The notes under the pieces are model-generated. The model made no database searches, was not told the DNA's origin, and saw nothing but the letters and a program-made list of their open reading frames with translations. This document shows, in pieces, positions 22,745-64,000 of a stretch of DNA of 64,000 bases. The stretch is from Macrostomum hystrix (Eukaryota > Animalia > Platyhelminthes). The stretch spans positions 17,608,001-17,672,000 of the forward strand of contig CATNEN010000038.1 of the NCBI GenBank assembly GCA_950097015.1, given 5' to 3'. Position 1 is the stretch's first letter. Every line of letters starts with the position of its first letter. Position numbers and translations under genes: made by a program.

Positions 22745-22812
22745 GGGCGGAATCGAGCTCAGGGACCTTGGTGCGAGGGGTAAACGCGTTAGACCGGTCT
22801 GCAACTCACCCT
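22745..22812 (-). mobile_element. SINE family A head fragment
   Basis: GGAATCGAGCTCAGGGACCTTGGTGCGAG shared with other copies. Confidence 0.7.
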
Positions 22813-22990: not shown

Positions 22991-25900
22991 TTATCGATTC
23001 GCTCCGCCGATTCTCGGCTCTCCGTTCTCGTCGTACTCGTCTAGAAAGCCGAGGTGCTCAGCCGCGGCCGCCTCCACAACTGCCCCGGCACCGACAGCGC
23101 CGTGCAGCTGCGGCGTCAGTTGATGCGGATTAAATGTTTAATTATCTTGCCTTCAATCAGGTGTTACACATAAATGGATAGCTCGTCCACTTGTAGCCTA
23201 TAGTCGCTAGATTTTTTCTATCTAACTAAAGCTAACGGAGGTGTGCCAAAAAAAAGAAATTTCATTGACTTACATCTGGCTGCGACACCGTCAGTCTGTA
23301 GTCATCTTCGCTGCCTTGCGGCGACAGGGACCTACGCCGCTCCTCGATGTTCAGATGCCGATAGGAAGCCACCCTGGGAATGGCCAAGAACCTATCGACG
23401 TCGTTCTCCGTGGGGCTGTCGTGCAGTTGGCCACCGCCAAGAACCTTCTTCTGCCATTTCTTCTGCCTGTTGAGCTCGATCCAGCGCTTGCGTTCCACCT
23501 CCTGTTAACAATTGTTTACAAATTTCATCTCTCCCGTGTCTCATCTCTCCCGTGTCTCATCTCTCCCGTGTCTCATCTCACCTGTGTCTCATCTCACCTG
23601 TGTCTCATCTCCCCTGTCTCATCTCTCCTGTGTCTCATCTCTCCTGTCTCATCTCTCCTGTGTCTCATCTCTCCTGTGTCTCATCTCTCCTGTCTCATCT
23701 CTCCTGTTTCTTATCTCTCCTGTCTCATCTCTCCTGTGTCTCATCTCTCCTGTGTCTCATCTCTCATGTCTCATCTCTCCTGTGTCTCATCTCTCCTGTC
23801 TCATCTCTCCAGTGTCTTATATCTTAAAGAGACTTTATATACATTTTATGCCAAGAAAATAAAGTGAAAGGAAGCAATAAAGTGGTGACAAAAACTCACT
23901 TCCTCCTTCTGGTGCTGCACCAGGTCTTTGACGTTTTGAAGCAGTTCGTCGATCTTTGACTCTGTCGAGTCGTCGTCCTTGGCTGACAGGCATAGCGCTC
24001 GGTTTAATGGAAAGAAGTCGAACTTCTCGTCGTTTAGCTGTGCATTGATTAGATTGTTGGGATTTCACATAAATTCATCAATTTTATCAGTTATAATCAA
24101 TTCCTGAGAAGCAGTGACAAGGTAAAATTCCTTGCCGATAAGGGAGGTGAGGTGAGATGAGACAGGGGAGTGTGACAGTAAAATGGGATAGGGGGAGAAA
24201 AGCTTACTTTAGGGGCCAAGGGAATTTAGAATTTAAGACTTATGGTGCCCGAATCTCGTCTGCGGGCCGATGGTTACTTACTGAAAGACTGCTGCAAAAA
24301 GGTCTATATTGGGGTTCAAAGTCTAGCAAAAAAACAAGCAACCTACCATTTTATAGACGTGCAGATCCAATGAAGTATAGTCATTCTTAGCCGTATCTTC
24401 CAGGTGAATAAAGAAGAAGATATAGGCCCACATGTTGTGCTCGTTGCGCACGTGATACTCGAAGCCCTGTCCGTGGTGCTCGAAGTCGTAGTTGTTGCGC
24501 GAGCAGATGAAGCAGCAGTTGCGCATGTCAGTTTCAGCTAGCCACTTCTTGTCGCGCAGCTGACTGAATGTGTCTACGATGATGCCAAAGATGATGTTCA
24601 AACCGATGGTGGTGATCAGGATAAAGAAGGTCACGTGGAAGAGTGCCATCCACACGTAGTGCTCAAAGGTTCGCTCTGTGGTTACTGGGGTGAGATTCTG
24701 CAAGAGATCGAGGTTTGATTTTTAGTAGTTTTTTTTCAGCTACGTTTTACTTTGAGAGGGGTCAGTGGCAGAGCGGTTAACGCGTTCGCCTCTCGCACCA
24801 AGGCTCCTGAGCTCGATTCAGCGGCGAGGCCACATTTATTTGCATTTTTTGCCCGTGAGTGCCAACCTCAAAGGCACAGTAAAAGTGTACACTGCCTCAT
24901 GATCAGAAATTAAGGGCAGATGCACACCTTTATGAGCGTATGTCTGCGTACCGTATAATAATAATGACAATAATTGCAGTGGAGCTGCGGGCAATGGCAC
25001 ATCATTTGTTGATACTAACCTGCCTGATTAAAACTTTCCTACCTGAATTTAAATCAAATACGCGCAGTGTCGTCAGGCAGTGTTAACTTCACTGTGCCTT
25101 GGAGGTCGGCCCTCAATGACGTAACTTGCACGACAAGCCCCTAAGCCTTCTCTCCGCGGCTGCGCCCCAAATGAATGTGGCCTCGCCGCGGAATCGAGCT
25201 CAGGGACCTTGGTGCGAGAGGCAAACGCGTTAACCGCTCTGCCAGTGACCCCCTTCTGCGTTTCGTATGTGTGAGTGTGAGCTCAGAAGCCCGCAGCCCT
25301 CCTGCAATTATAAAAAATCACGTTGGCACACTTGTTTAGCTTTTTTTCTGTTTCATCGCTGCATGATAGTTTGGTCCAGCCATTTAAATTTGCAAGCCAA
25401 TACAATACCTTTTGATTTTAGCATCAAATAGGGTTTGAAGGATTGAACTCACCTCAAAGAGGTCGCCAATTAAGCCAAATCGCAGCACGGTAACGAAGCA
25501 CTGGTACAGGTTGCCGCAGAACATCAGGCTCTCATCCGGGCGGAATCCGGCGCGAAATTTAGCAAAAGCGAGTACAGCGTACAGGTACATGATTACAATG
25601 CCGAGGACGGACACCCAGATCAGGGAGAGGCCTGCGTGGTGGATCGATAGGTGGGGTCCGGTTTTACGCGTGTTCAATCAGTTTCCGGACTATATGAAAC
25701 AACTTCTCTATGAATTAGCTCATAATGTACGTCCGTAGAATACATATACAAAGTTTACTCATCTAATGTAAAGTCGCAATCTGTCTCACACAATTTAATT
25801 TCAAATTCATCCATCCACCGTTCCCAAGCCCATCTACAATGGATCGCTCATTGGAGAGTGACGTGACGATTTACGACTACAAAAGTTGTCTGACTCAGAC

Positions 25901-28900
25901 AAGAGAGCTTAGCAACATGGCGCGTCCCAGAACAGCCATTTCGGGAATGGTTCGTTGAATCTCGTTAGATTTAGCCGTCGCTCTAAAACGAGGCTCGAGA
26001 GCGACGACCCTTAAGCTCCACAACCGATGAAAATTTAGCCGCTGTAGTGCCAGCACTGATTGAAAAAGATCCTGGAAGGACGGTACAACAACTGGCACAA
26101 CTAGCATTTCATCAGGAAGCTTTTCCACCATTCTTCATGAAAGGCTTCGGCTAAGCAAGGTATCCTCCCCCGAGGTGCCAAGCCATTTTTGACAGTTCGA
26201 CGGGGTATGGTAACCAAGCTCTCAAAGATGGTCCTGTTCCGAAGCCAAGCAGATGGTTGCTGCATGCCTTCATGGCTCATTGAGGTCTGATCCCGCTGGT
26301 AACACAGATGACACTGACTGCATGTGACAAAATGCATGCTCTAGGTGCTAGAGCATCTAAGGACTCAAAGGACTCAAACGAGAGGCGTCTAAGGACTCAA
26401 ACACGTGGCCTGTGCCAGGACAGCCCAGACCTGGCCCCGCGCGACTTTTTTTGTCCCGTCGTTTAAAGAGCCTTGCTCAAAGGAGTTCAGTTTGAGTCGC
26501 CAGCACGGGGCAGTCCAGCACTTTCGCAGTCACTCAGTACGAGTGAACCGGCTGCTTTACTACGTGGTTTGAAAGGAAGAGGAAGTGGATCTAAGCTACT
26601 GGGGAGTACTTTGAAAAGTCCTGAGAAGTATTTTTTCGACGCTTTTTTAATTCCACGTATCAGGAATTTTTTCAATACCCTAAGTTCACGAACTAGTTCA
26701 CGGGACGATCGCAATAAAAAATTTTCTTGATGAAACTAGACGCCAGACTTGAATTCTTACTTACCATTGGTCGTCACCGCCTGAATGACGCCCTGTAGCA
26801 TCTGATTGTTGTTGACAATGTTCAGCAGGTGAAAAGCAAAGAAGTACGGACTGTAGAAGGTCCCGGCAAAGGAACAGCCGACAAACACCAGGTAGTAGAG
26901 CGTCTGGATTGAGAACAACCGCACCGAGAGTTTGTCCTGGCCTCGCTGCTCCTGCAGGTCGTCGACTTCGTCCAGCTCTTTGCGTCGCCAGCTTCGCAGC
27001 TTCCTCACCAAAGCCGCCACCTCCGGTGGCCTCGGATGATTGGCCACAAAGAAGGCCAAGAGCAGCACCAGAGCCAGGGCGTCCAGCGTGTAGGCGAATG
27101 CCTGCATCCACTCGGACAGCCTAGGATAGGCCGCCTTCCACTGGCCAGTTGAGCTAAATGCGTTTTAACAAGGTACTCAAGCTGATGGACTTAGCACAGA
27201 AAAGTTCTGGGTCAGTCATACATGTAGTATGCCCGGGCCAGTTTTCCATGATAGTAGATAGACCACGGGTGGTATCTATCATTTTTTGGTATCTCCCAAA
27301 ATATTCAAACAATCGGCATGAAATTCCAGAACACGGTCATAAAACATCGGCATCGTCGAGATATATTAACGTCTCTTGTCGGGGTGTCTGGTGGCAAAAA
27401 TCCACCAATACGAGTATAGGCAAATCATTTAACCTTGTCGGCTGTTGTTTTTAATTCTTTTGTACTGATTTTTTTAATTGAACCAATATGGATTCGTCAT
27501 AGAAGTTTATACAGAGCAAGGTCAGTTGTCCTTGTCACCATCTCGGCAAGGCTGATGTCGGACGGCTTTCAAAGTTAGTTCATCGTAAAAAGCGGAAAAT
27601 TTTTATCCATAATATGAACTTTCACGAAAATCAGTCAAGATCGGTTTCGAAGCGATCGTGAAGTAGGCAGTGGGTGTTTGAAATCCCCCGGGATCCTTCA
27701 GCAGGGGGGGGGATTGCGTAACCTTTCTACTGCTAAAGCTCCTCCTTGTACTTCTTCTGCAGAGACGGTCTATAGTCAACCGGGCTAGCTTGTTAAGAAA
27801 AATAATTTCTTAACCCGGCGCCCGCACCCCTTTTAAAATTTGGTACATGCACATTGAGTTCCCATTCCTATTGGTTCCCTAATAATGAGTAAATAGATAT
27901 GATATTTGTACGATAACCACGTGACCCTGATGCTCTATCTAACCGCATACCTGTAGGCAGGAGCTGTAGCATTCGTGACATTTTCTATTGTGGTGACGTT
28001 TCCACCGCCGCCACCAGCGGCCGCCGCTGCAGCTTCGGGAGCCTCCAGCCCGATCAGCATGATGACGTTCAGCACAACGGCAACCAGAGTGGCCAAGTGA
28101 TTCCAGATCATCCAGAATCTGGTCAGCGAGATGGTCACCGGGTTTGACAACACCTTCTTCTGATAGTGAATGTCGTTCAGGATAGCCTTAGTCCAGTCCA
28201 TGAAGTCACGAATTTTCGTGCTAGACGAGTTTCGATCGACGCTCCATTTTAGTTTTTCTTTGACTTCTTCGCGAAGGACGTTCTGCCAATATAGAACACC
28301 GGCAGAGATAGGGATGTTAACAGATATGACTGGTCACTGTAGATGACTAAGGTAAGGTAACCAGTCTGTTACCTTATTTCGCACTCGAAAGTGCATCCTC
28401 TGCAGATTGTCCCCTTTGACAATCTCGATGGTCATGGAGTTCTTCTTGAACAGCTTGAACGCCTTCTGTTGCACTTCGGTGATTCGGAGCTCTGAAAAGG
28501 TTATTATATGCGTAGACAAGCATGTTAATGAATGTATTCGTAATTGTACTCGCAGTCAGTGAAGTACAACTGAGGTATCATAATCGGCTAATCATTTAAT
28601 CACCGCCCACGCGAAAGACGTTGATCGACTTTTAAAAGTCACATTTTTTGTTAAACTGGAATCTATCTACAGATAAAAAATCTGGACAAGCGAGGTGGTC
28701 CACGTAATTCTACTCATTCCACGCAACTAAAAAGCACAGACAAGCATTCATTTACGCGTTCCCATGTCGTCATAGGCACAAAATTAGCAAACTTATGGCT
28801 TTTGGTTTGACAATTGGATGGACGCTTTCACAAACACTTTAACAACATCTATGTATCGTAGTGACAGTAGAAATCTAAATTTGAATATACATTACCGCAA

Positions 28901-31900
28901 CTATTCAAAGGCGCTTTCAGAGGCTGCGTACAGCTGTTCTGTCCGTGGACAGGGGAGGCCTTCACACAAGCGCAAAATTCTACACTGCAGCTAATGCTGG
29001 CACCAATTTCACAACTGTGATAGCTGGGAAAGCAATAGGAAATTAATGCCTTGCTCAAGTCTACCTAATTGAGCTGAGGTTTGAACTCCCGACCTTCCAG
29101 TCTTTTAACACCCCGAAGTCGTTAAATTTTCTGATGATCGTAAAAATAAAACGATAAGAAAGTAATTTTTTAACGTCTAGATTGAAACGCCATACAAGTG
29201 TTATAGAAGCAATTCTGGAAATAAAATTCTTATTATTTGAAAAGCGACTCAAACAACTTTAAACAGCTGTTAATAAACAATTGAGCAAAGTATCAATGTG
29301 TTTGCGTTTCTACAAAACCAGGAGACCGATTAGTATCTCTATTTTTAATGATCTGATCGGCATCGTCCCATATTGCGCCGTTCAATTTAATAAGTCTATC
29401 TGTTCATTGTAATGACTCACAGACAAAATGCATAAATATATTCGTTCATTCTTTGTCATTTTACATGACTTTAAATATAAACATGAAGCTTAACCCTTTT
29501 CAGCATGCTCACACTAACATACTTTACGAAAAGCTTTTTATTTCATGACTCGAAACTGAAATTCAACTGAGATTGATATAAATTCTCCGTAGGAAATCAC
29601 ATCACTTTATAATATAGGAATAAAAGCGGCATCTGATATTTAAAAAAAAGTTAAATTTTAACACGACTGTTGTCGCAAAACTTATTGATCAATACGGACT
29701 TAAATGCGAAAAAAACCACGTTACTAGTGTACTAGAAGGTCAGGCTTGGACTAGCTGACGCTGTCACTACGAACCTTCAGCTGACAATTAAAAGTAGGAA
29801 TACCAAGCTACGAGCTCCGGGGGTCGGTGGCAGAGCGGTTAACGTGTTTGCCTCTCGCACCAAGGTCCCAAAGTTCGATTACCCGGCGAGGCCACAGTCA
29901 TTTGGGGCGCAGCCGCGGAAAGAAGGCCTTGGTGGCTTGTGGTGCAATTTACGCCCTTGAGGGTCAACCACCAAGGCACAGTGAAATGTACACTGCCTGA
30001 CGACGAGAAAGTCAGGGCAAATGTACACATCTGTGTGAGCGTATGCCTACGTATGGTATCTGTGTGTGTGTGCTCAGGAGTCAGCGAAATGGGCAGTATT
30101 GCCTCCTCGCTCGCTGCGGATCTAGTGTCACTTAATGATGTGCCATTGCCCGCAGCCCTCCTGCAATCACTATATTATATTATCAGATAACTCCCATTCG
30201 AATTTTTTGCTGCGGCTGAAAAAAGTCACGACACCGCCATGCAGCGACTTTTCGAATACAATTTGTTATTTCACTTGGCCGAATGTGGCTTGTTAAGCGA
30301 GATTTGAAAAATTCTAAACCCAAGTGCTGTGCCACCGGCTGAAACTGTTGAATTTCCAGAAGATCCACGCCTAGTAGAAGACCAGTGGACACCCAATAAC
30401 GACTGAAGTAACGTATATATATATAGAATGTATATATATGCAACACTCGTGCTTTTTGGGAAAAAGGTTTAAGGGCCACAAGTTGTCCGGAAAAGTAAAT
30501 AGCAAATTTACGTTTTGTACTGCCTGAGTTATGCAAACTATTTTTCATAATTTATTACACCTGCCCAATTAGACCAATGTGCAGCCGACAGCACAGCAGC
30601 AGCTATTGTACGGCACATATTAAGGCTGCGTATCGCTGTTCAGTCCATGGACTGGTTGGCGCCACGTACATTGGGAGTACCAATTAAACAGCTGGGTAAA
30701 CTATTTAGTTTCTTAATGCAGAGTTAAGTTTCTTGCTAAAGGACACAAATTATTTGTTCGGAGTCGTGAATCGAACCTCCGACCTTCAAGTCGTGAGTCC
30801 TACGCTCTAAACCACTAGGCTACAACCCCATCGAAGAGTCTTAGCATTATTATACGTTAGTATTTAATAGATACAAAGTGCATAGTAGATACTAAACTGA
30901 ACTGTATGTTTCAGCAAGTCCTAATGGTATTATATAGTTCGGTGGAGTACACTTTTATGGTCCCAGCAAAATACATACTAAAACATTTTCCATAGTCCAT
31001 TTCGAGTTCTGCGGGCTTCTACTCTAGTATTCCATGTAGACACTAAAGACTAAGATGCTGCAGACGCACTTGGTGTCTTGGTTGACAAGCTGATCAAATT
31101 TCAAAGCTTGGCACCAGCTGTACTGATGTCAGATTTGAAAACAAAAAAACTGACAATAAACGATCCTCTCCTATCCTACCCGTCTGTTTTACAAATGGTG
31201 GTCCTTAATTGGGCCGTTTTATATGTTCGTGCTAGAGTAGGCGCGTGCTTGAGTGAGGGCGGCGAGTTCTCATCCATTTTTTTGCTCTGTTCAGACGCAG
31301 CAAAAAATTATCAGGTGGAAGTTCCACTTGATACTTCTACTATTAAGCCATTCTCAGGTATCGAAACCTACAGGACACACGGACATAGACTACTAAACAA
31401 AGATTTAACCGGCGAACATCGTGCTCAATGAAACATACCTCTTCCATAGGGATCTGAATCTGCAAGCAAAGCAGGGGGTGGCGCGCGTGTCCGAACAGGT
31501 GCACTTTAACAAACAATGTCCGGAGGTTTTTGCACCGATTTCAAATCGCAGACCTTTTCAAAAGTGAAAATAGTCACGTGATTTGCTCGTACAGTCCTAA
31601 TTTAAGTAGAATATGCATAATTTTTCCGTTGATTTTACACTAAATCTAGCCTGACAATATGGCAAACTAATTAATCTCACCTTTCTTTCCCATCAGCGGA
31701 TCAATGTCGTAAAGGCGGGCCAGAATCACGTAGAACGAGAAGCCGACATCGAAAACCAACTCCATGAGCTCCTTCCTATCCTCTTTGGCCTGTTAATGTG
31801 GTACACAATGCACAACAAAAAAGTAATAATTTAGTATTTGGTGCCTCTTGCACCATGGTCCCTAAGCTCGATTCCGCGGCGAGGCCACATTTATTTGTGG

Positions 31901-34900
31901 TGCAGCCGCGGAGAGAAGGCTTGGGGGCTTGTCTTGTAATTGACCTCCTTGAGGGGCAATCCTCCAAGGCACAGTGAGAGTGTACACACCTGTGTGAGTG
32001 TGTGTCTGTGTAAAGTATCTGTACGCCTGTGTGCTCAGGAGTCAGCGAAATGGGCAGAACTGGCTCCTCGCTGACTGTGGGTTTACTGTGCCATGGCCCA
32101 CAGCCCTCGTGCAATTAATAGATTTGTGTTGTTGGTGGCGTTAAATCAATGAAAATGGGTGTAATGTGGGCGGCATATCAAAGAAAAGAATAGCAGTAAA
32201 GGCGGCCCATCCAAGAAACGAATAGCAGTAAAGGCGGCCCATCAAAGAAACGAATAGCAGTAAAGGCGGCATATGAAAGAAATGAATAGCAGTAAAGGCG
32301 GCATATCAAAGAAACGAATAGCAGTAAAGGCGGCCCATCAAAGAAACGAATAGCAGTAAAGGCGGCATATGAAAGAAATGAATAGCAGTAAAGGCGGCAT
32401 ATCAAAGAAACGAATAGCAGTAAAGGCGGCCCATCAAAGAAACGAATAGCAGTAAAGTCGGCCCATCAAAGAAACGAATAGCAGTAAAGGCGGCACATCA
32501 AAGAAACGAATAGCAATAAAGGCGGCCCATCCAAGAAACGTATAGCAGTAAAGGCGGCATTTGAAAGAAACGTATAGCAGTAAAGGCGGCATATGAAAGA
32601 AATGAATAGCAGTAAAGTCGGCCCATCAAAGAAACGAATAGCAGTAAAGGCGGCCCATCTAAGAAACGAATAGCAGTAAAGGCGGCCCATCAAAGAAACG
32701 AATAGCAGTAAAGGCGGCCCATCAAAGAAACGAATAGCAGTAAAGGCGGCCCATCAAAGAAATGAATAGCAGTAAAGGCGGCAAGTTAAATTAATAGTTG
32801 CAAAAGGCGGGACATCAAAGAAATAACGTCTGTAGAATGTGACACATTCAAAATGTAATTTTAAAAAAGAATGAATGAGATGTGAATGGGGTGGAAAGAA
32901 GTCAATCAAAGGCCCGTAAAAAATATAAAGATAACGGTGGCACTTTATTGCCGAATCATCTCAAAATTTGGTCTCACCAAAAGTCTCCGAAACAGTCCAC
33001 CGCCTTCCTTTCCATCGTTGAGTTGCATCTCGTAGCACTCGGCCATGACCCGGTAGAGCGCGCCCTTGTCCAGAGTGTCCTTAACCTCCCGGGCGATGAC
33101 AATGGCCTCAGGTGAGTTTTCTTCAATCAGCGAGATCACTAGATTAGCAATGGACTGGCGCAGCTGGGCGATTTGAGCCACGCTGCAGGCTTCAAAGTCT
33201 GAGCTGCGCAGAATGAAGTTGATGTAGTCGATGATCTTGTTGTCGTACACAGTGGCCCGATTCTCTTGGTTGCCCTAATAGTTTTGGATTGAGGTGGCGG
33301 CTTCGGAGTGACGTGATTGGTTCGGAGTGAGGTGGTTGGCTTAATCTAAGGAGGCGGTTTGGAGTGAGGTGGCGGTTCGGATTGAGGTGGTGTTTTGGAT
33401 TGAGGTGGTGTTTTGGATTGAGGTGGTGTTTTGGATTGAGGTGGCGGCTTCGGAGTGAGGTGGTTGGTTCGGAGTGAGGTGGTTGGCTTAATCTAAGGAG
33501 GCGGTTTGGAGTGAGGTGGCGGTTCGGATTAAGGTGGTGTTTTGGATTGAGGTGGTGTTTTGGATTGAGGTGGTGTTTTGGATTGAGGTGGTGTTTTGGA
33601 TTGAGGTGGTGGTTTGGAGTGAGGTGATGTTTTGGAGTGAGGTGGCGGTTCGGATTGAGGTGGTGTTTTGGATTGAGGTGGTGGTTTGGATTGAGGTGGT
33701 GGTTTGGAGTGAGGTGATGTTTTGGATTGAGGTGGCGGTTCGGATTGAGGTGGTGTTTTGGATTGAGGTGGTGGTTTGGATTGAGGTGGTGGTTTGGAGT
33801 GAGGTGGTGGTTTGGAGTGAGGTGGTGTTTTGGAGTGAGGTGGTGTTTTGGATTGAGGTGGTGTTTTGGATTGAGGTGGTGTTTTGGATTGAGGTGGTGG
33901 TTTGGAGTGAGGTGATGTTTTGGAGTGAGGTGGCGGTTCGGATTGAGGTGGTGTTTTGGATTGAGGTGGTGTTTTGGATTGAGGTGGTGGTTTGGAGTGA
34001 GGTGGTGGTTTGGAGTGAGGTGATGTTTTGGAGTGAGGTGGCGGTTCGGATTGAGGTGGCGGTTTGGATTGAGGTGGTGGTTTGGAGTGAGGTGATGTTT
34101 TGGAGTGAGGTGGTGTTTTGGATTGAGGTGGTGGTTTGGAGTGAGGTGATGTTTTGGAGTGAGGTGGCGGTTCGGATTGAGGTGGTGTTTGGATTGAGGT
34201 GGTGTTTTGGATTGAGGTGGCGGTTTTGAGTGAGGTGGTGTTTTGTAGTGAGGTGGCATTTTAGATTGAGGTGGCGGGTCTGGAAGGCTTTTTGGCCGAA
34301 GCCTTGTATTCCGCAAGGTACGAGTACTTACCAGATTAATTAAGTGATAAATGAGCTACATATACGGCCGGGGTATTGGCATTTTGGGACTATGCAGTTG
34401 GGCTATAATTCATGAGAAAGTCGAGAATTCAGTAGCAAGGAAAGGAGAGCAGTCAATTCACGAACCGCGCAGAACTCGTTGACAGTGGAAAATAGCTGAA
34501 TTAGCAAGTCGATGGTGTCAGCGTTGATGTTAGCGTAGGCCACGTTGATAAACTGGGACACCTCCGCAACGATGTTGAACGACTTCACATTGTCCGGCTG
34601 TTCACGTAGGTAATTCTGCAGTCCCAGGTGTTGGCCATCGCAGATGCGGGCTAGCACCTTGAGGACTAGGCCGATGTAGCCGTCGTCCTTCATAGAGATC
34701 TTCCAGTCTTGCTCGGAATCACCCATGCCGGATGCTGAGTTGACGTCCTGATTGATAGAAGACATCACTTCGCATCGTGGTTAATACTGTACTTAATAAT
34801 GGTTAATAATGGCACTTTATCTAGTGAGAGTCGACCTGTAACCAGCAAAGAGTCGATTTAGCCCATTCCGCTGACTCCTGAGCACACAGACGAACACGAA

Positions 34901-37900
34901 TACAGTACGCATGACTTCATTTCATTGTCAGGCATTGTACACTCTTAGTGCGGCTTGGCCCTTATTTGTGTTAAATAGCAGGGCAAGCCCCAAAGCCTTC
35001 TCTGCGTGACTTCACCTTAAATGTATGTGGCTTCGGCGCGGATTCGAGCTCAGGGACCTTGGTGCGAAAAATCGGACATGCTGCCGTTCAGAAAATCAAC
35101 GCCCATTGTATTTTAGATTTACTTTAACAGGTAGTAAAATATAACTAATTATACCTGCCCCATTGAGTCACATGTGCAGCCGACAGCACAGCCTATTGCG
35201 CTGTGCGAAGGACATCTCACAATCCTATAATTGGTACCCATTTAACAGCTGGGTGAACTTAAGCAATGCAGAGTTAGGTGTCTAACTAATAGACACAATT
35301 GTTCCAGTGGAGTCGGGATTTGAACAACGGACCTTCAAGTCGCGAGTAGATACCGACCTTCTGAGGCCTGGTTTTATGAAGTTCCACAGAATCTTACCCT
35401 TGAGCCAGGAGTGCCACCGCCGCCGGCGCCGGCGCCGCAGCCTCCGTTGCTTCGATCGAGCAGTCGCTGCCTAGCAGAAGCCGAATCCCTTTCGGAACCC
35501 ACAGTGCCATTCGCAAAGGCCACAGACTTCTTCTTGCTTCCGCCCCCGTTTCCGCCGCTGCCGCCGCCGCCGCCGCCGCCGCCAGAGCCGATTCCATTGC
35601 CGCCGCTGTCTCCGTGGTCGCCGTGTGCGCCGTTGCCGCAGCGACGCTTTGACATCGAGGCGGACTGCATCTGCGTTAGACTCACTCGACGCTGAAGTGA
35701 AGATGATAAAGAAGGTTCGTTCTAAATTTTGAAATAATTCGATATAGTTGACAGTTTCCGATAAATACAATTTTTAAGGATAAAGTTTTACGTATTGTAT
35801 CTAATAGATGCTAATAGATGAGTCGGCGTGAAGTACGTGCAATTATGGAATAAGCAAGCATCTCTGATTGGTCGGTTCAATGGATTCAAAGGGCTGATTA
35901 TTCCGCCCTTTGCCGAGTCGGCTGCAGAGTCGCTGATTGGCTGATAAGTTCAACAGTTTTAAATGTGCGATTTCTCTGCCGAGTCAGGCAGCGGACGTAG
36001 CTGATTGGCTGGTAGGTTCAACAGTTTTAAATGTGCGATTTCTCTGCAGAGTCAGGCAGCGAAAGTAGCTGATTGGCTGGTAGGTTCAACAGTTTTAAAT
36101 GTGCGATTTCTCTGCAGAGTCAGGCAGCGAAAGTAGCTGATTGGCTGGTAGGTTCAACAGTTTTAAATGTGCGATTTCTCTGCAGAGTCAGGCAGCGAAA
36201 GTAGCTGATTGGCTGGTAGGTTCAACAGTTTTAAATGTGCGATTTCTCTGCAGAGTCAGGCAGCGAAAGTAGCTGATTGGCTGGTAGGTTCAACAGTTTT
36301 AAATGTGCGATTTCTCTGCAGAGTCAGGCAGCGAACGTAGCTGATTGGTTGTTGAAGACGAGATATTTGAAATTTTAGCCTTTTTGCAAAATTAAAGTAT
36401 GAAGATCTGTCATTGGTTGACAAGGGACAAATGACCTAGTTCAAGATTATTAATTAGTAACATCTAATTTCAACAAATCATCAGGAAATTGTCTCTAGAG
36501 TGAAGCCAAAATTAGTGCATGTACAAAATAAAAATAAAGCTAAACTATTTATTCACAGATTTACTCTAACTGAAGGCATAAAAATGATCACAGAAACACA
36601 CAAGGGAGTTAAAAAACTTCTGAAAAGTAATATTTTCATTACGTCAACCAAAAGCGTTGTGACGTAAAGAACTAACTGTTTACTCAAATCCCGTAAATTT
36701 TGTTTTACTTCTGACCACGAGAAAGAAGTTAAGAATATCGAATGCAGACAAGTCAGTTAAAAAATAAATGGGTTACATATTTGTTAGTTCGGATTTCTTA
36801 ATTAGACAGCTGAAATCTCATTAATTATTTGAGTAGGTTCAGGGGGGTAAAAATAGCTAATTACTCGGAACTAAATGTAGTTACCAGTGCGTCCTGCAAC
36901 AATTTGTTAGTTTGAATTAGGCTTGAAAAGTTAAATATAATAATTTTTCTGTTAGAAAAACATTCAATTCAATTTCACTTAAATCAAAGACTTACAGTGA
37001 GATCATTATTAGTCTGTTCAATTTTCATCTCCAGGTGGTATTGCTGAATTTGCTGCAATTTTTTGTAATTTTATGTGGTTTTGTGTACCTTTTATACAGC
37101 AGTTTTGTGTACTTTAAAACAGTTTTGTGTACTTTTATACAGTTTTGTGTACTTTTATACAGTTTTGTGTACTTTTATACGGTTTTGTGTACTTTCATAC
37201 AGTTTGGTATACTTTTATACAGTTTTGTGTACTTTATGAATATGATCTAACGGTGTTACCTGAAGAGCTTTGACCCCTAGTGTCATTGTTGTTCGAAGAT
37301 TATCAGCTTGACTTTTCGCGTCTAACAAGCGTGCCCTCTGCTGCGAGATTAGCAATCGTTTCTCTTTGATGTTGGCGGTGGACATTTGCATGCGATTGCG
37401 CACCGCGTAGAAAAATACCTCCTCTTTAGTGTGAAGGAAGTAGTGCAGCATGCTTTGCTGCAAGTGTTTTTTTGGAAAATATCGATTTTTTAAGAGTTTG
37501 GTGTCGACATTCAGCTAATGATAAAATGGAACTGTTAGTTAATGTTTGCTGATGGTAAAGGGTCTGATTGGAGAAGGAGTGAGGTGGGTGCCCGCTCGGA
37601 TTCTGATTGGAGGCGGAGTGAGGTTGGGTGCCCGCTCTGATTCTGATAGGATGCGGAGTGAGGTTGGGTGCCCGCTATGATTCTGATAGGAGGAGGAGTG
37701 AGGTTGGGTGCCCGCTATGACTCTGATCGAATGCGGCATGAGGTGCAGGGTGTCCGCTCTGATTCTGATTGGATGCGGAGTGAGGTTGGTGCCCGCTATG
37801 ATTCTGATAGGAGGAGGAGTGAGGTTGGGTGCCCGCTATGACTCTTATTGAATGCGGCATGAGGTGGGTGTCCGCTCTGATTCTGATTTGAGGCGGAGTG

Positions 37901-40900
37901 AGGTTGGGTTCCCGCTCTGATTCAGATTGGAGGCGGTGTGAAGTGCGTGTCCACTGCTCTATTTAGGGTCTTTATGACAGCGGAGTGTTAGGAGTGTCAG
38001 CACACATTTTTTAACGAAAGAGCTGGCGAACCTGAACTTTCTCGTTTGCGTTGAACAGCATGATGCCAAGCAGTGACAGAACCTCCTTTGCAATGGAACT
38101 ATTCGTGGAAGCCAGGTGCGGCAGAGCGTGCTTCATCAGGTCGAATGAGTTTAGAGTGGACTGAATGTCCGAGATGGTTCGTAGACCACTGAAACGACAT
38201 TAAAGCCAAAATATTACAGTCCTAACCACCATTAGGATATATAAAATATAATATAATATGATTATATTATATTCTATTGCATTCTATTCTATTCTATTCT
38301 ATTCAACTCTATTCAGCCGGGACAGGCCGCTCACCGCTTCACTCGAAACTCAGACATGCGGACTTCCCATTCGTCCGGCAGTTTCCGTTCCTCATTGTGA
38401 ATGAAGGCTCGAAGGATTTGTAAGACCCGCACAGTCAGACGCTCCTGATCTCGGCGACTATTGGCCTCCTGACTAGTCGGCTTGGAGACGTGCTGCGAAC
38501 TCGATACCGACGTGATTCTGGGAAAAATAGAAAAAGAAAAAAATCGACTGGCAAAGGCATAACAGGCCCCCTAAATTATTTACGCTGAAATAGAAAATCC
38601 TTTTTTCCTTGATTTCTTCTCTGTACTTCAACCAATTTTGCGTATTGCACTACTAAAATCCCTTAGTAATATGTATAACATTGGTTCATTACATCATGTT
38701 ACAACGCATCAAAATCTCAGGTCTTATAAACACTTTTTATATTCATTTTTCAATGCATATCGTAATGATTGAAACTATCAGTGCCGATACTCTACAATCG
38801 AGGTATTTGCCAGGTATTTGACACGCATATTCCAAGGTCCACTAGAAGAAGAATGATGGGACACTTCGTTTCTTGGAAAAAGTTATTATTAAAGGCTAAT
38901 TTTTACGAAAAAATGCACTAGCGAGATAGGAAATCTTCACGTTTTATTCACATTCAAATGTTGATAACTTTTTATTGGAATCAGATTCAACTCTGTTCTT
39001 TTAAAATAACTTAGAAAACATGCTGCTTCAAGGAATTTTGTAGCCAAGTGGTAAGAGCGTCTGACTTACGACTTGAAGGTCGGGGGTTCGGTTCTTAGCT
39101 CCCCTGGAACAATTGGTGTCCGTAAGCAACATACTTACATCTGCATTGCTTCAGTTCGCTCAGCTGTTAAATGGGTACTCAGCATTAGCTGGGCTAGTTG
39201 AGGGTGGGTGTGGCGTCCCCCCAGTCCATGGACTGGAACAGCCGAACGCAGCCTTTAAATGTTATAAAAACTGATGAACTTATTTGACAGGTATGTCCAT
39301 GTGTCTGACAGTTTATATCCTTGCTTTGGACAGATATGTCGTGACATGTGACAGGTATATCCTTGTATTTAAAAACTGTAATTTATATATTGTATTTAAA
39401 ATATGTGGGTTTCCCAGGTAAGATACTAGGATTTGACAAGTTGATTTTTAAGTTCGGCAGGTATTTCAATAGTGTTTCACAATGTCTTCAGAGCTAATTT
39501 ATTGAGACATTCGGCTAGCTCAGCGCCCTGATCAGTCTGGGTGCTGCCAGCATGGCGGCTGAGAAGAACAAAAGGCCGAACGCGGTCATGCGCATGATCG
39601 TACCGATACTCAGACTGAACCAGTGCGGCCTAGTCATGCCCCTCAGGTCATAGCCAGACTCCGTGATCAGCAGGGTGAGGTAGAGCACATTGCCGACTAA
39701 ATCATCTGCTTGCAGCCGATTAGTTTTCAGCCTTTTCAGCAGCACGTGAAACAATTTCTGATTGACTCGAGCCTCGTCGTACAGCAGCTGCTCAAGGTAA
39801 TCGGACATGCTGAGTCTTTGAAAGTTTAGCTTCTAAGACACTTATCGAGTGGCAGCTTTGACTGTTGATACTTCTTTAATATAGCGTCAAAGGGTTTCTA
39901 CCATAGACAAAGCAATGAAAATGTAATCAGTTGGTTAGAGCTTCCGACTTCTAACCGAAATAATTAAAATTAATAATAATTGATTACACCTGCCACAATA
40001 GGGCCAGATGTGCAGCCGACAGCACAGCCGCAGCTATTGCGCGGCGCATCTGAAGACTGGGTAACGCTGTTCAGTCCATGGACTGATGGACTGGGGGGAC
40101 GCCACACCCACCTTCAATTACCCCAGCTATTGCTGGTACCCATTTAACAGCTGGGTGAGCTGATGCACTGCAGAATCTTTAGTTAAGTGGTTTGCTAAAT
40201 GACACAAATTGTTTCAGTGGATCGAGTCGGGAAACGAACCCCCGACCTTCAAGTCGTGAGTCCGACGCCCTAACCACTAGGCTACAACCACTAGGCTAAC
40301 CGAAAGCAAGTCACTTCTATCTGCCCTGACTTTCTAATCGTCAGGCAGTGTACACTCTCTCTGTGACTTGGAGGTTGGCCCTCAAGGGTGTAAATTGCAG
40401 GACATGCCCCAAGCCTACTCTACGCGGCTGCGCCCCAAATAAATGTAGCCTCGCCGCGGAATCGAGCTCAGGGACCTTGGTGCGGGATCGAATAATCATG
40501 CTAAGAAATCCAATCTTACAGTTGCTATAAAGTTTCTAGCACTTTCTTCATTCCCAAATAAACGCTTTCTAAAAAAGGATTCCCCTATATGAGCCCAAGT
40601 TTCTAAAAATACGCTCGTAGCTAACTCTAATTTTTGTATTTTACCTTAGTCCGCTAACTAGCAGTCTGGCCAGCTTGTAACGAAGTTCCGGCTTGCGACT
40701 GTTCAGATTAACAAAACAGCGAACGTGATTTTGAAACTCTTCGTCAAGGGGCAGCGCTTCGTCACCGCCTACGCAGGTGTATTCTGCGGGTTGTCGATGA
40801 GAATCAGAGTGAGAAACGATGAGAATCACTGTGAGAACCGATGAGAATCAGAGTGAGAACCGATGAGAATCACTGTGAGAACCGATGAGAATCACTGTGA

Positions 40901-43900
40901 GAACCGATGAGAATCAGAGTGAGAACCGATGAGAATCAGAGTGAGAACCGATGAGAATCAGAGTGAGAACCGATGAGAATCACTGTGAGAACCGATGAGA
41001 ATCAGAGTGAGAACCGATGAGAATCAGAGTGAGAACCGATGAGAATCACTGTGAGAACCGATGAGAATCACTGTGAGAACCGATGAGAATCAGAGTGAGA
41101 ACCGATGAGAATCAGAGTGAGAACCGATGAGAATCACTGTGAGAACCGATGAGAATCACTGTGAGAACCGATGAGAATCACTGTGAGAACCGATGAGAAT
41201 CACTGTGAGAACCGATGAGAATCACTGTGAGAACCGATGAGAATCAGAGTGAGAACCGATGAGAATCACTGTGAGAACCGATGAGAATCACTGTGAGAAC
41301 CGATGAGAATCAGAGTGAGAACCGATGAGAATCACTGTGAGAACCGATGAGAATCACTGTGAGAACCGATGAGAATCAGAGTGAGAACCGATGAGAATCA
41401 CTGTGAGAACCGATGAGAATCACTGTGAGAACCGATGAGAATCAGAGTGAGAACCGATGGGATCAATGTGCGAACCGATGAGAATCACTGTGAGAACCGA
41501 TGAGAATCACTGTGAGAACCGATGAGAATCACTGTGAGAACCGATGAGAATCAGAGTGAGAACCGATGAGAATCACTGTGAGAACCGATGAGAATCACTG
41601 TGAGAACCGATGAGAATCAGAGTGAGAACCGATGAGAATCACTGTGAGAACCGATGAGAATCACTGTGAGAACCGATGAGAATCACTGTGCGAACCGATG
41701 AGAATCACTGTGAGAACCGATGAGAATCACTGTGCGAACCGATGAGAATCACTGTGAGAACCGATGAGAATCACTGTGAGAACCGATGAGAATCACTGTG
41801 AGAACCGATGAGAATCACTGTGAGAACCGATGAGAATCAGAGTGAGAACCGATGAGAATCACTGTGAGAACCGATGAGAATCACTGTGAGAACCGATGAG
41901 AATCAGAGTGAGAACCGATGAGAATCAGAGTGAGAACCGATGAGAATCAGAGTGAGAACCGATGAGAATCACTGTGAGAACCGATGAGAATCACTGTGAG
42001 AACCGATGAGAATCACTGTGAGAACCGATGAGAATCAGAGTGAGAACCGATGAGAATCACTGTGAGAACCGATGAGAATCACTGTGAGAACCGATGAGAA
42101 TCAGAGTGAGAACCGATGAGAATCAGAGTGAGAACCGATGAGAATCACTGTGAGAACCGATGAGAATCACTGTGAGAACCGATGAGAATCACTGTGAGAA
42201 CCGATGAGAATCAGAGTGAGAACCGATGAGAATCAGAGTGAGAACCGATGAGAATCACTGTGAGAACCGATGAGAATCAAAGTGAGAACCGATGAGAATC
42301 AGAGTGAGAACCGATGAGAATCAGAGTGAGAACCGATGAGAATCAGAGTGAGAACCGATGAGAATCAGAGTGAGAACCGATGAGAATCACTGTGCGAACC
42401 GATGAGAATCAGAGTGAGAACCGATGAGAATCAGAGTGAGAACCGATGAGAATCAGAGTGAGAACCGATGAGAATCAGAGTGAGAACCGATGAGAATCAC
42501 TGTGAGAACCGATGAGAATCACTGTGAGAACCGATGAGAATCAGAGTGAGAACCGATGAGAATCACTGTGAGAACCGATGAGAATCACTGTGCGAACCGA
42601 TGAGAATCACTGTGAGAACCGATGAGAATCACTGTGCGAACCGATGAGAATCACTGTGAGAACCGATGAGAATCACTGTGAGAACCGATGAGAATCAGAG
42701 TGAGAACCGATGAGAATCACTGTGAGAACCGATGAGAATCACTGTGAGAACCGATGAGAATCACTGTGAGAACCGATGAGAATCACTGTGAGAACCGATG
42801 AGAATCAGAGTGAGAACCGATGAGAATCACTGTGAGAACCGATGAGAATCAGAGTGAGAACCGATGAGAATCACTGTGAGAACCGATGAGAATCACTGTG
42901 AGAACCGATGAGAATCAGAGTGAGAACCGATGAGAATCACTGTGCGAACCGATGAGAATCACTGTGAGAACCGATGAGAATCACTGTGAGAACCGATGAG
43001 AATCACTGTGAGAACCGATGAGAATCAGAGTGAGAACCGATGAGAATCACTGTGAGAACCGATGAGAATCACTGTGAGAACCGATGAGAATCAGAGTGAG
43101 AACCGATGAGAATCACTGTGAGAACCGATGAGAATCACTGTGAGAACCGATGAGAATCACTGTGAGAACCGATGAGAATCACTGTGAGAACCGATGAGAA
43201 TCACTGTGCGAACCGATGAGAATCACTGTGAGAACCGATGAGAATCACTGTGAGAACCGATGAGAATCACTGTGAGAACCGATGAGAATCACTGTGAGAA
43301 CCGATGAGAATCAGAGTGAGAACCGATGAGAATCACTGTGAGAACCGATGAGAATCACTGTGAGAACCGATGAGAATCAGAGTGAGAACCGATGAGAATC
43401 AGAGTGAGAACCGATGAGAATCAGAGTGAGAACCGATGAGAATCACTGTGAGAACCGATGAGAATCACTGTGAGAACCGATGAGAATCAGAGTGAGAACC
43501 GATGAGAATCAGAGTGAGAACCGATGAGAATCACTGTGAGAACCGATGAGAATCACTGTGAGAACCGATGAGAATCAGAGTGAGAACCGATGAGAATCAG
43601 AGTGAGAACCGATGAGAATCAGAGTGAGAACCGATGAGAATCAGAGTGAGAACCGATGAGAATCAGATGTGAGAACCGATGAGAATCAGAGTGAGAACCG
43701 ATGAGAATCAGAGTGAGAACCGATGAGAATCAGTGTGAGAACCGATGAGAATCACTGTGAGAACCGATGAGAATCACTGTGCGAACCGATGAGAATCAGA
43801 GTGAGAACCGATGAGAATCAGAGTGAGAACCGATGAGAATCAGAGTGAGAACCGATGAGAATCAGAGTGAGAACCGATGAGAATCAGAGTGAGAACCGAT

Positions 43901-62581: not shown

Positions 62582-62744
62582 CTTGAAGTGTTATTGATTA
62601 ATTTTTGAAATTCGGAAAAAAAGTCTTCACCAACCGAAATTTCGTTGTTTTTGGAAGCAATAGCTTTTGAGAAGCTAAGAATTGCACAAGTGCACACAAA
62701 GAATTGTGCGCTTTTGGAAGTTTTGTGTTTTCGGATCATAGTAA

Positions 62745-63058
62745 TTTTGTAATTTTTGTACTTTTCTACATTTTGCACTTTTAGTAATTTTGTACTTTTA
62801 GGAATTTTGTTATTTCAGGAATTTTGTACTTTAAGGAATTTTGTACTTTTAGGAATTTTGTACTTTTAGGAACTTTGTACTTTTAGGAACTTTGTACTTT
62901 TAGGAATTTTGTACTTTTAGGAATTTTGTACTTTTAGGAATTTTGTACTTTTAGGAATTTTGTACTTTTAGGAATTTTGTACTTTTAGGAATTTTGTACT
63001 TTTAGGAATTTTGTACTTTTAGGAATTTTGTATTTTTAGGAATTTTGTTAGGAATTAG
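62745..63058. repeat. Minisatellite, 17-bp unit
   Basis: TTTTGTACTTTTAGGAA. Confidence 0.96.
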
Positions 63059-63567
63059 GAAGCTTTTTCGTTTCTTAGAACTGATTCATGCAATCGCCTA
63101 CTGTGAAAAGTAGCCCCAATGGTGCATTCATTATCTTCTCAAAAATCCCATAAATAGGAATAAAAAACTATTGTTTCCAGTATAAACAGGGACGATGCTG
63201 ATCCATTAATGGGATTATTTCTTTCGTCTCTTCTTCCCTGGCCTAGTCTGGGAATTTCAATACCAAAAGAAATTACACAAAAGTGTCTATTTTCTTTTTT
63301 AGACTGGAAATATATTTTAAGTGCGTCTTAAATTGCAGCTGATTGGGGGTAGTTTAGCGGTTTCTGAAGGAAACTCCTGGCCATACGGGCTGCAGAAATG
63401 CTTTTAGCCTGGACTTAAATTTTATTGCCCGCAATTTTGCGTAAACCTTTTGGGATTTCGCTGAGGATTAGTGCATTAGCGGTACAACTGAATACAATTT
63501 GATTCGACCGTTTCCGATACGGATAAAGTACTCAAATATATACAGACCTGTGTTACTGAACTAGATT

Positions 63568-63742
63568 TCTACGATTCCATCTACGATTCCATCTACGATT
63601 CCATCTACGATTCCATCTACGATTCCATCTACGATTCCATCTACGATTCCATCTACGATTCCATCTACGATTCCATCTACGATTCCATCTACGATTCCAT
63701 CTACGATTCCATCTACGATTCCATCTACGATTCCATCTACTG
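63568..63742. repeat. Minisatellite, 12-bp unit
   Basis: CTACGATTCCAT, reverse complement of the 60708 array. Confidence 0.97.
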
Positions 63743-64000
63743 TTCCTGGAATGAATATGCGTGCCTAATATTAAACGCCTGAATGACGGCAGACAACGAG
63801 GCACTTACGAATCGCATTTGGTGCTCACTCTACAAGTCCCTACAAGCCAGCTTTATCTAAACAAACTAGACCAAACCCATGAGAATTGCTGCACAAGATT
63901 TTATAAAAAGTTACTCGTTTTCAGCGTTAGGGACAGTCAGACATGCTCAGGCATCGAGTTAAGTCTCAAGTCCGTATTCCCCTCCCAATCAGAGAAATCA

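What the first reader, a model, noticed from the sequence alone, without database searches (positions are those of the whole stretch)
25453..25520. IP3R-family channel lacking the canonical GGG(I/V)GD selectivity filter
Seen: the pore region, within a single exon, reads C-GNLYQ-CFVTVLRFGL-IGDLFE. Established: canonical IP3Rs read C(I/V)VT.L..GLR(S/N)GGG(V/I)GD and RyRs GVRAGGGIGD; this glycine run forms the filter. The alignment implies a clean 5-residue loss of RxGGG with GL and IGD kept. The S6 gate (LNIIFGIIVDTF), the C2H2 zinc finger and the reading frame are intact, so it does not look like a pseudogene. The S5-pore luminal loop is also very short. Inference: an intracellular channel with a rebuilt pore (different selectivity or conductance), or a non-conducting regulatory subunit.
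Basis: partly seen in the sequence, partly recalled or inferred. Interest (0 to 1): 0.82.

Follow-up and report, generated by a model that had tools for sequence, protein, structure and literature searches.

The report
Flatworm IP3R-B channel, glycine-free pore
This exon encodes the pore of an intact flatworm gene from a little-studied invertebrate branch of the IP3-receptor/ryanodine-receptor channel family, and its odd pore motif without the glycine run is the normal, conserved signature of that branch rather than a one-off.

Summary
Minus-strand exon 25453-25631 reads ...CGNLYQCFVTVLRFGLIGDLFE, with no GGGxGD. The gene is intact and is not human; its nearest kin are Macrostomum lignano proteins.

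The motif is not peculiar to this gene:
- R[YF]GLIGD[LM]F[ED] occurs in 61 of 120 relatives, from molluscs, annelids, nemerteans, a brachiopod and Macrostomum.
- This genome has 4 such loci and 4 loci of a sister type (HRGLIAGIYD).
- It also has one canonical IP3R (GGGIGD) and one canonical RyR.
- The pore exon is under purifying selection: dN/dS is 0.06-0.14 against its paralogues.

The "clean 5-residue deletion" is not established. The distance from the pore-helix Cys to S6 is 54 residues in both types. AlphaFold2 models put the pore helix and S6 at the same positions in both types. Different aligners give gaps of 0, 2 or 5 residues.

The gate, the zinc finger, the Ca2+-site acidic residues and six of eight IP3-contact side chains are kept.

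Best reading: a further paralogue of the known but physiologically uncharacterised IP3R-B branch. This scan already reached the same conclusion on two other pieces of this genome. Conduction, selectivity and ligand were not tested.

The parts
23012..64000 (-). Part of the IP3R-B-type gene that lies in the window (about 30 exons). The 5' exons continue beyond the right edge, to about 30 kb further (own-genome loci L017-L019).
   Evidence: tblastn of natural homologues P0152, P0003, P0015, P0005, P0217 and P0161 gives collinear exon hits. The five stops in the P0217 hits lie in introns or past exon ends.
25453..25631 (-). Exon for S5, the pore helix and the pore loop: (G)LSLIWVSVLGIVIMYLYAVLAFAKFRAGFRPDESLMFCGNLYQCFVTVLRFGLIGDLFE
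   Evidence: Sequence and splice signals. 70% identical to M. lignano P0003/P0152. dN/dS is 0.06-0.14 against paralogues L002-L004.
25453..25476 (-). Codons of GLIGDLFE, the glycine-free motif that stands where canonical channels have GL(R/L)xGGGxG(D/E)
   Evidence: In the 61 GLIGD-type relatives: R 61/61, first G 61/61, L 60/61, I 57/61, second G 61/61, D 57/61, F 58/61. The following residue is acidic in 65 of 66.
24347..24697 (-). Exon for the luminal loop end, S6 with the gate (LNIIFGIIVDTF), the linker zinc finger (CFIC...HVRNEH) and the start of the C-terminal domain
   Evidence: PDB phmmer: IP3R3 9.4e-20, RyR2 1.1e-17. Pfam Ion_trans 1.6e-06.
24698..25452 (-). Intron between the pore exon and the S6 exon. 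It holds two copies of a dispersed short repeat in inverted orientation (24789-24819 and 25191-25221).
26763..27041 (-). Exon with S4 and the start of the S4-S5 linker (...FYSPYFFAFHLLNIVNNNQMLQGVIQAVTTNG)
   Evidence: tblastn hits; ORF listing
34466..34699 (-). RIH-associated exon. It carries the two acidic residues that align with the Ca2+-site residues E1882 (here D) and E1946 (here E) of human IP3R3.
   Evidence: Pfam RIH_assoc 1.2e-16; alignment to 6dqj_A residues 1873-1948
23265..24037 (-). C-terminal exons (23900-24037 and 23265-23504); a last short hit lies at 23012-23056
   Evidence: tblastn hits

Best explanation
The exon belongs to an intact, selectively constrained paralogue of the IP3R-B branch of the IP3R/RyR intracellular channel superfamily, in a macrostomid-like flatworm genome. 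Across animals this branch has lost the GGGxG(D/E) filter. One spiralian subfamily carries the fixed decapeptide R[YF]GLIGD[LM]F[ED] instead, and this gene is one of four such genes in this genome.

Shown here: family placement, conservation, purifying selection, and retention of the S6 gate, the zinc finger, the Ca2+-site acidic residues and most IP3-contact residues.

Inferred, at roughly even odds: it forms an ER tetrameric cation channel. Its narrow part would be a shorter loop at the C-terminal end of the pore helix, in which the conserved Asp and Glu side chains, rather than glycine backbone carbonyls, supply the cation-attracting ring. It would be opened by Ca2+ and possibly by IP3.
For: - Nearest relatives are M. 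lignano proteins at 77-85% identity over the S6 exon.
- The window's two exons fall in a 12-row clade with SH-aLRT 97 and 99. The rest of that clade comes from Mollusca, Annelida, Nemertea, Brachiopoda and Platyhelminthes.
- The genome's own canonical IP3R and RyR fall outside that branch.
- Of the 120 proteins listed, 61 are GLIGD-type, 49 have other glycine-free loops, 9 are canonical (the named ones are choanoflagellates), and 1 lacked a recognisable S6 motif.
- Own-genome census: 4 GLIGD-type loci, 4 HRGLIAGIYD-type loci, 1 GGGIGD IP3R, 1 GGGIGDE RyR and 1 very divergent locus.
- dN/dS for the pore exon is 0.06-0.14, with dS 1.0-2.0, against the three close paralogues.
- No in-exon stops.
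- The gate Phe and the zinc-finger Cys/His align to IP3R3.
- E1882 aligns with D and E1946 with E.
- IP3-site side chains against human IP3R3: R266->R, R503->K, K507->K, R510->R, R568->R, K569->K.
- The AlphaFold2 model of a natural snail-like orthologue with the same GLIGDLFE has a pore helix running through ...RYGLI, then G-D, then a one-turn helix LFEV. pLDDT there is 82-87.
Against: - No functional or expression data exist for this gene. No identical transcript-derived fragment was found.
- According to a citing passage, the one tested member of the branch, Capsaspora IP3R-B, could not bind IP3. I recall that it also released no Ca2+ in response to IP3.
- Two IP3 contacts differ: Y567->S, and R270 aligns with P (an R follows it in this gene).
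- The bulky Leu and Phe inside the loop could just as well close the pathway.
- The structural models are monomers of moderate confidence: mean pLDDT 60.8 and 76.2, and 66-75 in the filter blocks (residues 121-140) of the control.
- Two clade members depart from the motif: P0001 reads RFGFDWR, probably a faulty gene model, and the Lingula protein has GLIGA.
- That Capsaspora CAOG_04510 is the published CO.IP3R-B was not verified.
Confidence: 0.8

Rival explanations
1. One reading: a canonical IP3R pore lost exactly RxGGG by a 15-nt deletion. GL and the (I/V)GD of the filter were kept, leaving a shortened filter with the original Asp.
For: Profile-profile alignment (hhalign) of GLIGD-type against canonical sequences places a 5-residue gap exactly there and pairs IGD with (I/L)G(D/E).
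Against: - The same alignment needs a compensating 5-residue gap on the other side, immediately afterwards.
- Total length from the pore-helix Cys to S6 is 54 residues in both classes.
- The GLIGD type aligns without gaps to the sister type (GLIDGLQE / GLIAGIYD). That type aligns to canonical sequences with only a 2-residue gap, so the three alignments contradict each other.
- MAFFT pairs LFE with LGE using a 2-residue gap.
- phmmer aligns the motif to the RyR filter GGGIGD with no gap within the motif.
- AlphaFold2 places the pore-helix end and the S6 start at the same positions in both types.
- In any case the change is ancient and clade-wide, not specific to this gene.
Confidence: 0.15
2. 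A non-conducting subunit: the protein keeps the scaffold but no longer passes ions. It would act as a regulatory, tethering or dominant-negative partner of the canonical IP3R or RyR.
For: - The glycine run, which mutagenesis ties to conductance in IP3R and RyR, is absent (passages in PMC2995152; G2498S loss of conduction in PMC13503717).
- The tested Capsaspora IP3R-B is reported as not binding IP3 (citing passage).
Against: - The pore loop itself is the most conserved short block of the clade.
- The pore exon has dN/dS 0.06-0.14.
- The S6 gate residues and two acidic residues in the loop are kept. That is unexpected if permeation no longer mattered, although a structural role could conserve them too.
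Confidence: 0.25
3. A pseudogene or an assembly artefact (15 nt missing).
For: None was found beyond the unusual motif. Expression of this particular gene is unconfirmed.
Against: - Collinear exons without in-exon stops over about 63 kb.
- Strong purifying selection.
- The same motif occurs at three other loci of the genome and in five phyla.
Confidence: 0.02

Closest known systems
IP3R-B subfamily. Named by Alzayady et al. 2015, Mol Biol Evol, which I could not read and cite from recall plus a citing passage. Called 'IP3RB' in leech by Heath-Heckman et al. 2021, PMC7992859, of which I read passages.
   Same: - IP3R-like length and Pfam architecture in the full-length relatives.
- A branch separate from IP3R-A and RyR.
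- The branch holds Capsaspora, choanoflagellate and invertebrate proteins, and no vertebrate protein is among the 120 listed.
- The leech paper says this subfamily is absent from vertebrates and that its physiology remains to be determined.
   Different: Nothing places this gene outside the subfamily. The glycine-free pore motif is not mentioned in the leech paper ('pore' occurs 0 times). I could not check whether the 2015 paper describes it.
Canonical IP3 receptors (IP3R-A; vertebrate ITPR1-3; this genome's own copy at locus L009)
   Same: - RIH_assoc domain, 6-TM channel domain, S6 LNxIFGxIxDTF, and CxxC/HxxxxH zinc finger.
- A profile of the clade aligns to IP3R3 from residue 3 to 1121 and again in the channel domain, 595 bits in total.
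- Most IP3-contact basic residues and both Ca2+-site acidic residues are kept.
   Different: - The filter GGG(V/I)GD is absent.
- The gene lies outside the IP3R-A lineage in the tree.
- Y567->S, and R270 is not matched.
Ryanodine receptors (this genome's own copy at locus L016: GLRAGGGIGDEIESPD)
   Same: - The channel domain of the clade profile scores higher against RyR2 (267 bits in one stretch) than against the IP3R3 channel domain (137.7 + 36.8 bits).
- phmmer aligns the motif to the RyR filter GGGIGD with no gap within the motif.
   Different: - Only the C-terminal channel region aligns with RyR chains.
- Relatives are 2300-3000 residues long with IP3R-type N-terminal domains.
- There is no glycine run.

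Membership tests
IP3R/RyR superfamily | RIH / RIH-associated domains | tested here: met
   RIH_assoc PF08454, E = 1.2e-16, on ORF 34403-34768. Full-length relatives carry PF01365 and PF08454.
IP3R/RyR superfamily | C-terminal 6-TM channel domain with the S6 gate motif and a CxxC...HxxxxH zinc finger after S6 | tested here: met
   The S6 exon aligns to IP3R3 (9.4e-20) and RyR2 (1.1e-17). The alignment printed for IP3R3 shows the motif, both Cys and both His matched. Pfam Ion_trans also matches.
IP3R/RyR superfamily | Selectivity-filter sequence GGGxGD between the pore helix and S6 (passages in PMC2995152) | tested here: not met
   The exon reads RFGLIGDLFE. The genome's own canonical IP3R and RyR have the filter.
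IP3R-A (canonical IP3 receptor) | Groups with IP3R-A in a phylogeny | tested here: not met
   The genome's own IP3R-A piece (L009) lies outside the 29-row branch that holds the window's exons. IP3R-A sampling was thin (one sequence) and its branch is long.
IP3R-A (canonical IP3 receptor) | IP3-coordinating residues. The list is recalled from the ligand-binding-core literature; human IP3R3 numbering was counted on the alignment. | tested here: inconclusive
   R266->R, R503->K, K507->K, R510->R, R568->R and K569->K are kept. Y567->S, and R270 aligns with P (an R follows it here). Binding itself is not testable here.
RyR | About 5000 residues, with SPRY and RyR-repeat domains | tested here: not met
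   Relatives are 2300-3000 residues long and carry the IP3R-type domains PF08709 and PF02815. Only the channel region aligns to RyR chains.
IP3R-B | A third branch beside IP3R-A and RyR, holding filasterean/choanoflagellate and invertebrate proteins and absent from vertebrates | tested here: met
   50-row branch with SH-aLRT 95; 29-row branch with SH-aLRT 91 that includes Capsaspora CAOG_04510. The names include no vertebrate. That CAOG_04510 equals the published CO.IP3R-B is not verified.
IP3R-B | No IP3 binding (reported for the Capsaspora protein; citing passage) | not testable with these tools
   The sequence keeps six of eight contact side chains, so this is open for the spiralian clade.

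The most novel reading that the evidence does not exclude
Spiralian GLIGD-type IP3R-B proteins are working intracellular channels with a permeation design of their own within the IP3R/RyR superfamily. A two-residue G-D link at the end of the pore helix is followed by a one-turn helix bearing a conserved Glu, so that acidic side chains replace the glycine-carbonyl filter and give a different conductance or selectivity. The channels would still be gated by Ca2+ and perhaps by IP3. The growth of the IP3R-B branch to at least eight genes (four of them GLIGD-type) in this flatworm would then point to cell-type-specific roles, like the touch-neuron-specific ip3rb2 of the leech.
Probability: 0.3. Interest if true: 0.6.

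Novelty: new member of a known kind. Interest (0 to 1): 0.35.

Why it matters
IP3R-B is the third, ancestral branch of the intracellular Ca2+-release channels. Vertebrates lost it, and it has hardly been studied physiologically (leech paper).

All 110 glycine-free proteins in the list, which include every animal member named there, lack the glycine filter (the 120th protein could not be scored). One spiralian subfamily has fixed a different acidic motif under strong constraint. Together these give a concrete question: what do these channels conduct, and what opens them?

For this particular window the result is mostly a clarification. The oddity is the family norm, it is not a deletion unique to this gene, and the scan has already reported it twice in this genome.

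Tried and rejected
Human origin: rejected. The nearest relatives are Macrostomum lignano proteins, and the assembly is 220 Mb in 42 contigs.

Pseudogene or assembly error: rejected.

A one-off remodelling of this gene: rejected.

Reading the IP3-binding residues exon by exon against the PDB mostly failed.
- The beta-trefoil exon gave only weak RyR2/IP3R1 hits.
- One ARM1 exon gave nothing.
- The other matched only a designed repeat protein, which I take as spurious.
- I therefore used a profile of 18 natural full-length relatives and then read this gene's own exons by eye against it.

Transcript support was sought with the S6 exon. The 11 hits were all 75% identical or less, so none comes from this gene, and its expression is unconfirmed.

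Foldseek on the model only confirmed the IP3R/RyR channel fold. It gives no residue-level equivalence, so it could not settle the alignment.

ARAGORN found no tRNA-like head for the dispersed repeat.

Literature:
- Searches found only the leech paper discussing this subfamily.
- The 2015 founding paper is not held, so I cannot say whether the glycine-free pore is already in print there.
- Supplements were closed and may hold pore alignments.

Exons were searched, aligned and placed in trees one by one.
Full report
OBSERVATION. The finding lies on the minus strand. Codons 25518..25453 read CGNLYQCFVTVLRFGLIGDLFE. They sit in one exon, 25453-25631, with an AG acceptor at 25633-25632 and a GT donor at 25452-25451. 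The exon starts in phase 1 and encodes S5, the pore helix and the pore loop. The next exon, 24347-24697, encodes the end of the luminal loop, S6 (LNIIFGIIVDTF) and a CxxC...HxxxxH zinc finger. It matches IP3R3 (9.4e-20, 74 bits) and RyR2 (1.1e-17, 67 bits) about equally well. Pfam finds Ion_trans on this exon and RIH_assoc on ORF 34403-34768.

GENE MODEL AND ORIGIN. Every exon was searched, aligned and placed in trees on its own. Natural homologues map collinearly by tblastn from window 23012 up to the right edge. They continue for about 30 kb more in the same contig (loci L017-L019), so the gene spans about 63 kb. The five stop codons inside the P0217 hits all lie in inserted blocks (introns) or past exon ends. 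The contig is not human. The nearest proteins are from the flatworm Macrostomum lignano, 85% and 77% identical over the S6 exon. The assembly is 220 Mb in 42 contigs.

IS GLIGD A CLADE MARKER? Yes.
- A search of 1.84 billion representative proteins with the S6 exon gave 3969 hits. The closest ones carry R[YF]GL[IVM]G[DA] where the filter should be.
- In a tree of 102 rows, the window's two exons fall in a 12-row clade (SH-aLRT 97). That clade sits inside a 50-row branch (SH-aLRT 95), which also holds Capsaspora CAOG_04510 and choanoflagellate proteins that still read GGGLGE.
- A second search used the channel region of the Tubulanus protein P0015 and listed 120 proteins. Of these, 61 are GLIGD-type, 49 have other glycine-free loops, 9 are canonical GGGxG[DE], and 1 had no recognisable S6 motif. 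The named canonical ones are Salpingoeca.
- The GLIGD-type proteins come from Mollusca, Annelida, Nemertea, Brachiopoda and Platyhelminthes. NCBI mostly labels them 'ITPR1/2/3-like'.
- Within them the motif is nearly fixed: R 61/61, first G 61/61, L 60/61, I 57/61, second G 61/61, D 57/61, F 58/61. The next residue is acidic in 65 of 66.
- There are exceptions. P0001 (M. lignano) reads RFGFDWR, probably a faulty gene model, and Lingula has GLIGA.
- A tree of 38 named rows gives the GLIGD clade SH-aLRT 99. It also recovers a sister spiralian clade (HHG.V[ED]G.Y / HRGLIAGIYD; SH-aLRT 95). Hemichordates, an acoel and Trichoplax fall in a 26-row animal clade (SH-aLRT 95), and a sponge and Capsaspora lie just outside it.
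- Both spiralian clades hold molluscs, annelids, nemerteans, a brachiopod and Macrostomum, so the duplication predates these phyla.
- This genome's own canonical IP3R and RyR pieces lie outside the branch, on long branches. Sampling of those two families was thin.

CENSUS IN THIS GENOME. The S6 exon finds 16 matches in the assembly. Reading the pore exon next to each gives the following loci.
- Four GLIGD-type loci: this one, C30:1.73 Mb, C38:32.14 Mb and C29:0.75 Mb.
- Four HRGLIAGIYD-type loci: two about 5 kb apart on opposite strands of C10, one on C11 and one on C39.
- One canonical IP3R (C7, GLRNGGGIGDLLRKPS).
- One canonical RyR (C41, GLRAGGGIGDEIESPD).
- One very divergent locus (C12).
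So the animal has ordinary release channels as well as an expanded glycine-free branch.

SELECTION. Against the three close paralogues the pore exon has dN/dS of 0.064, 0.100 and 0.144, with dS of 1.0-2.0. Wherever dS could be computed for the S6 exon, dN/dS is 0.012-0.18. The pore is constrained.

DELETION OR REPLACEMENT?
- The distance from the first pore-helix Cys to the S6 LN motif is 54 residues in 53 of 66 GLIGD-type sequences and in 30 of 68 canonical ones. It is the mode in both classes.
- hhalign of the two profiles does place a 5-residue gap, pairing IGD with (I/L)G(D/E). It then needs a compensating 5-residue gap immediately afterwards.
- The GLIGD type aligns without gaps to the sister type. 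The sister type aligns to the canonical type with a 2-residue gap. The three alignments therefore contradict one another.
- MAFFT pairs LFE with LGE using a 2-residue gap.
- phmmer aligns the motif to the RyR filter GGGIGD with no gap within the motif.
- I ran AlphaFold2 on two natural proteins with the same 49-sequence alignment. In the GLIGD-type protein P0004 the pore helix is residues 157-170, then G-D, then a one-turn helix LFEV at 173-176, and S6 starts at 186.
- In the canonical control P0037 the pore helix is residues 114-127, then SGGG as coil, then a turn LGE at 132-134, and S6 starts at 143.
- Counted from the pore-helix Cys, the pore helix is at positions 4-17 and S6 starts at position 33 in both models. 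Only the coil before the turn is two residues shorter in the GLIGD type.
- These are monomer models of moderate confidence. pLDDT is 82-87 around the P0004 loop and 66-75 in the two ten-residue blocks that hold the control's filter (residues 121-140).
- What is robust: helix and S6 keep register, the glycine coil is gone, and two conserved acidic residues remain. Which acidic residue, if either, corresponds to the canonical filter Asp is open.

OTHER FUNCTIONAL SITES.
- The gate Phe, the downstream hydrophobic residue of S6 and the four zinc ligands are matched to IP3R3.
- The two acidic residues that I recall as the activating Ca2+ site of IP3R3 are E1882 and E1946. They align with D and E in exon 34466-34699.
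- A profile of 18 full-length GLIGD-type proteins aligns to human IP3R3 from residue 3 to 1121. I recall the IP3 contacts as R266, R270, R503, K507, R510, Y567, R568 and K569, and I counted their numbering on that alignment.
- At those contacts the clade and this gene's own exons show R, P (followed by R here), K, K, R, S, R and K. Six of the eight side chains are kept or conservatively replaced, so IP3 binding cannot be ruled out from sequence.

LITERATURE.
- Passages in PMC2995152 establish GGGxGDx as the conductance-determining sequence in IP3R and RyR.
- A passage in PMC13503717 reports that G2498S in GGGVGD abolishes conduction.
- A passage in PMC9113742 cites Alzayady et al. [quoted passage not shown]
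- The 2015 paper itself is not held. What I say of its content beyond that passage is recalled.
- Passages in PMC7992859 (leech) describe IP3RB as present in the bilaterian ancestor and lost in vertebrates. They also say it is duplicated in leech, that ip3rb2 is specific to touch neurons, and that its physiology remains to be determined. The word 'pore' occurs 0 times in that paper.
- Searches found no other paper on this subfamily in the held library.
- Supplements were closed and might contain pore alignments.

MECHANISM. Shown: this is an intact, constrained IP3R-B-type gene whose pore loop is the clade's conserved signature. Inferred, at roughly even odds: it forms a tetrameric ER cation channel in which the Asp at the pore-helix C-terminus and the Glu of the following turn provide the negative ring, while Leu and Phe pack away from the axis. 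It would be gated by Ca2+ and possibly by IP3. The main rival is a non-conducting regulatory subunit. It is not excluded, but it fits poorly with the extreme conservation of the loop itself.

EARLIER NOTES OF THE SCAN. Two notes on other pieces of the same genome (s1-313516 and s1-363646) reached the same conclusion: a flatworm IP3R-B whose glycine-free pore is the branch's normal signature. I saw them only after my own searches and trees, and my results agree with them. A third note (s1-853319) concerns a 97-codon ORF in an intron of this gene. It has no Pfam match, and no homologue covers it.

VERDICT. The finding is a new member of a known but poorly understood kind, of moderate-to-low interest for this window. 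The family-wide question of what these channels conduct and what opens them remains open and testable.

Noticed in passing
window 40795-46846; also 48362-50363, 51026-52108, 52525-53613, 54008-55433, 57826-59203, 33283-34274, 32169-32782: Many introns of the gene are filled with large tandem arrays. An example is a 22-bp unit repeated 275 times over 6 kb at 40795-46846. This explains the strong GC- and AT-skew blocks in the composition profile.
   Followed up: partly
window 15839-15869, 16341-16371, 22750-22780, 24789-24819, 25191-25221, 31844-31874, 40459-40489: A dispersed short repeat occurs 7 times in the window (0 expected by chance). Two copies lie in inverted orientation inside the 755-nt intron between the pore exon and the S6 exon. 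ARAGORN sees no tRNA in the window.
   Followed up: partly
window 20660-21184 (minus strand), with neighbouring ORFs at 19974-20588: A reverse-transcriptase fragment (Pfam RVT_1, E = 1.1e-15) lies about 2 kb downstream of the gene's 3' end. It is probably a decayed retroelement.
   Followed up: partly
window 39515-39808 (minus strand): A 97-codon ORF inside an intron, flagged by another first-stage note (s1-853319). It has no Pfam match, and none of the six homologues mapped by tblastn covers it.
   Followed up: partly
own genome, C10:2149299-2154794 (loci L005/L015 and L006/L013): Two HRGLIAGIYD-type IP3R-B genes lie about 5 kb apart on opposite strands, which looks like a recent local duplication.
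   Followed up: no
own genome, C12:1079034-1079249 (locus L011): A very divergent family member: the S6-like stretch reads MNIIAGVILDKF and the zinc finger CLLCNR...HHVEKEH. Its pore was not found within the 3.2-kb locus.
   Followed up: no
own genome, C29:749109-750272 (loci L004/L010): The fourth GLIGD-type paralogue has its S6 exon split by an extra intron at ...SQLR|DKKW.... The two TGA 'stops' reported by the genome search lie beyond that exon end.
   Followed up: partly
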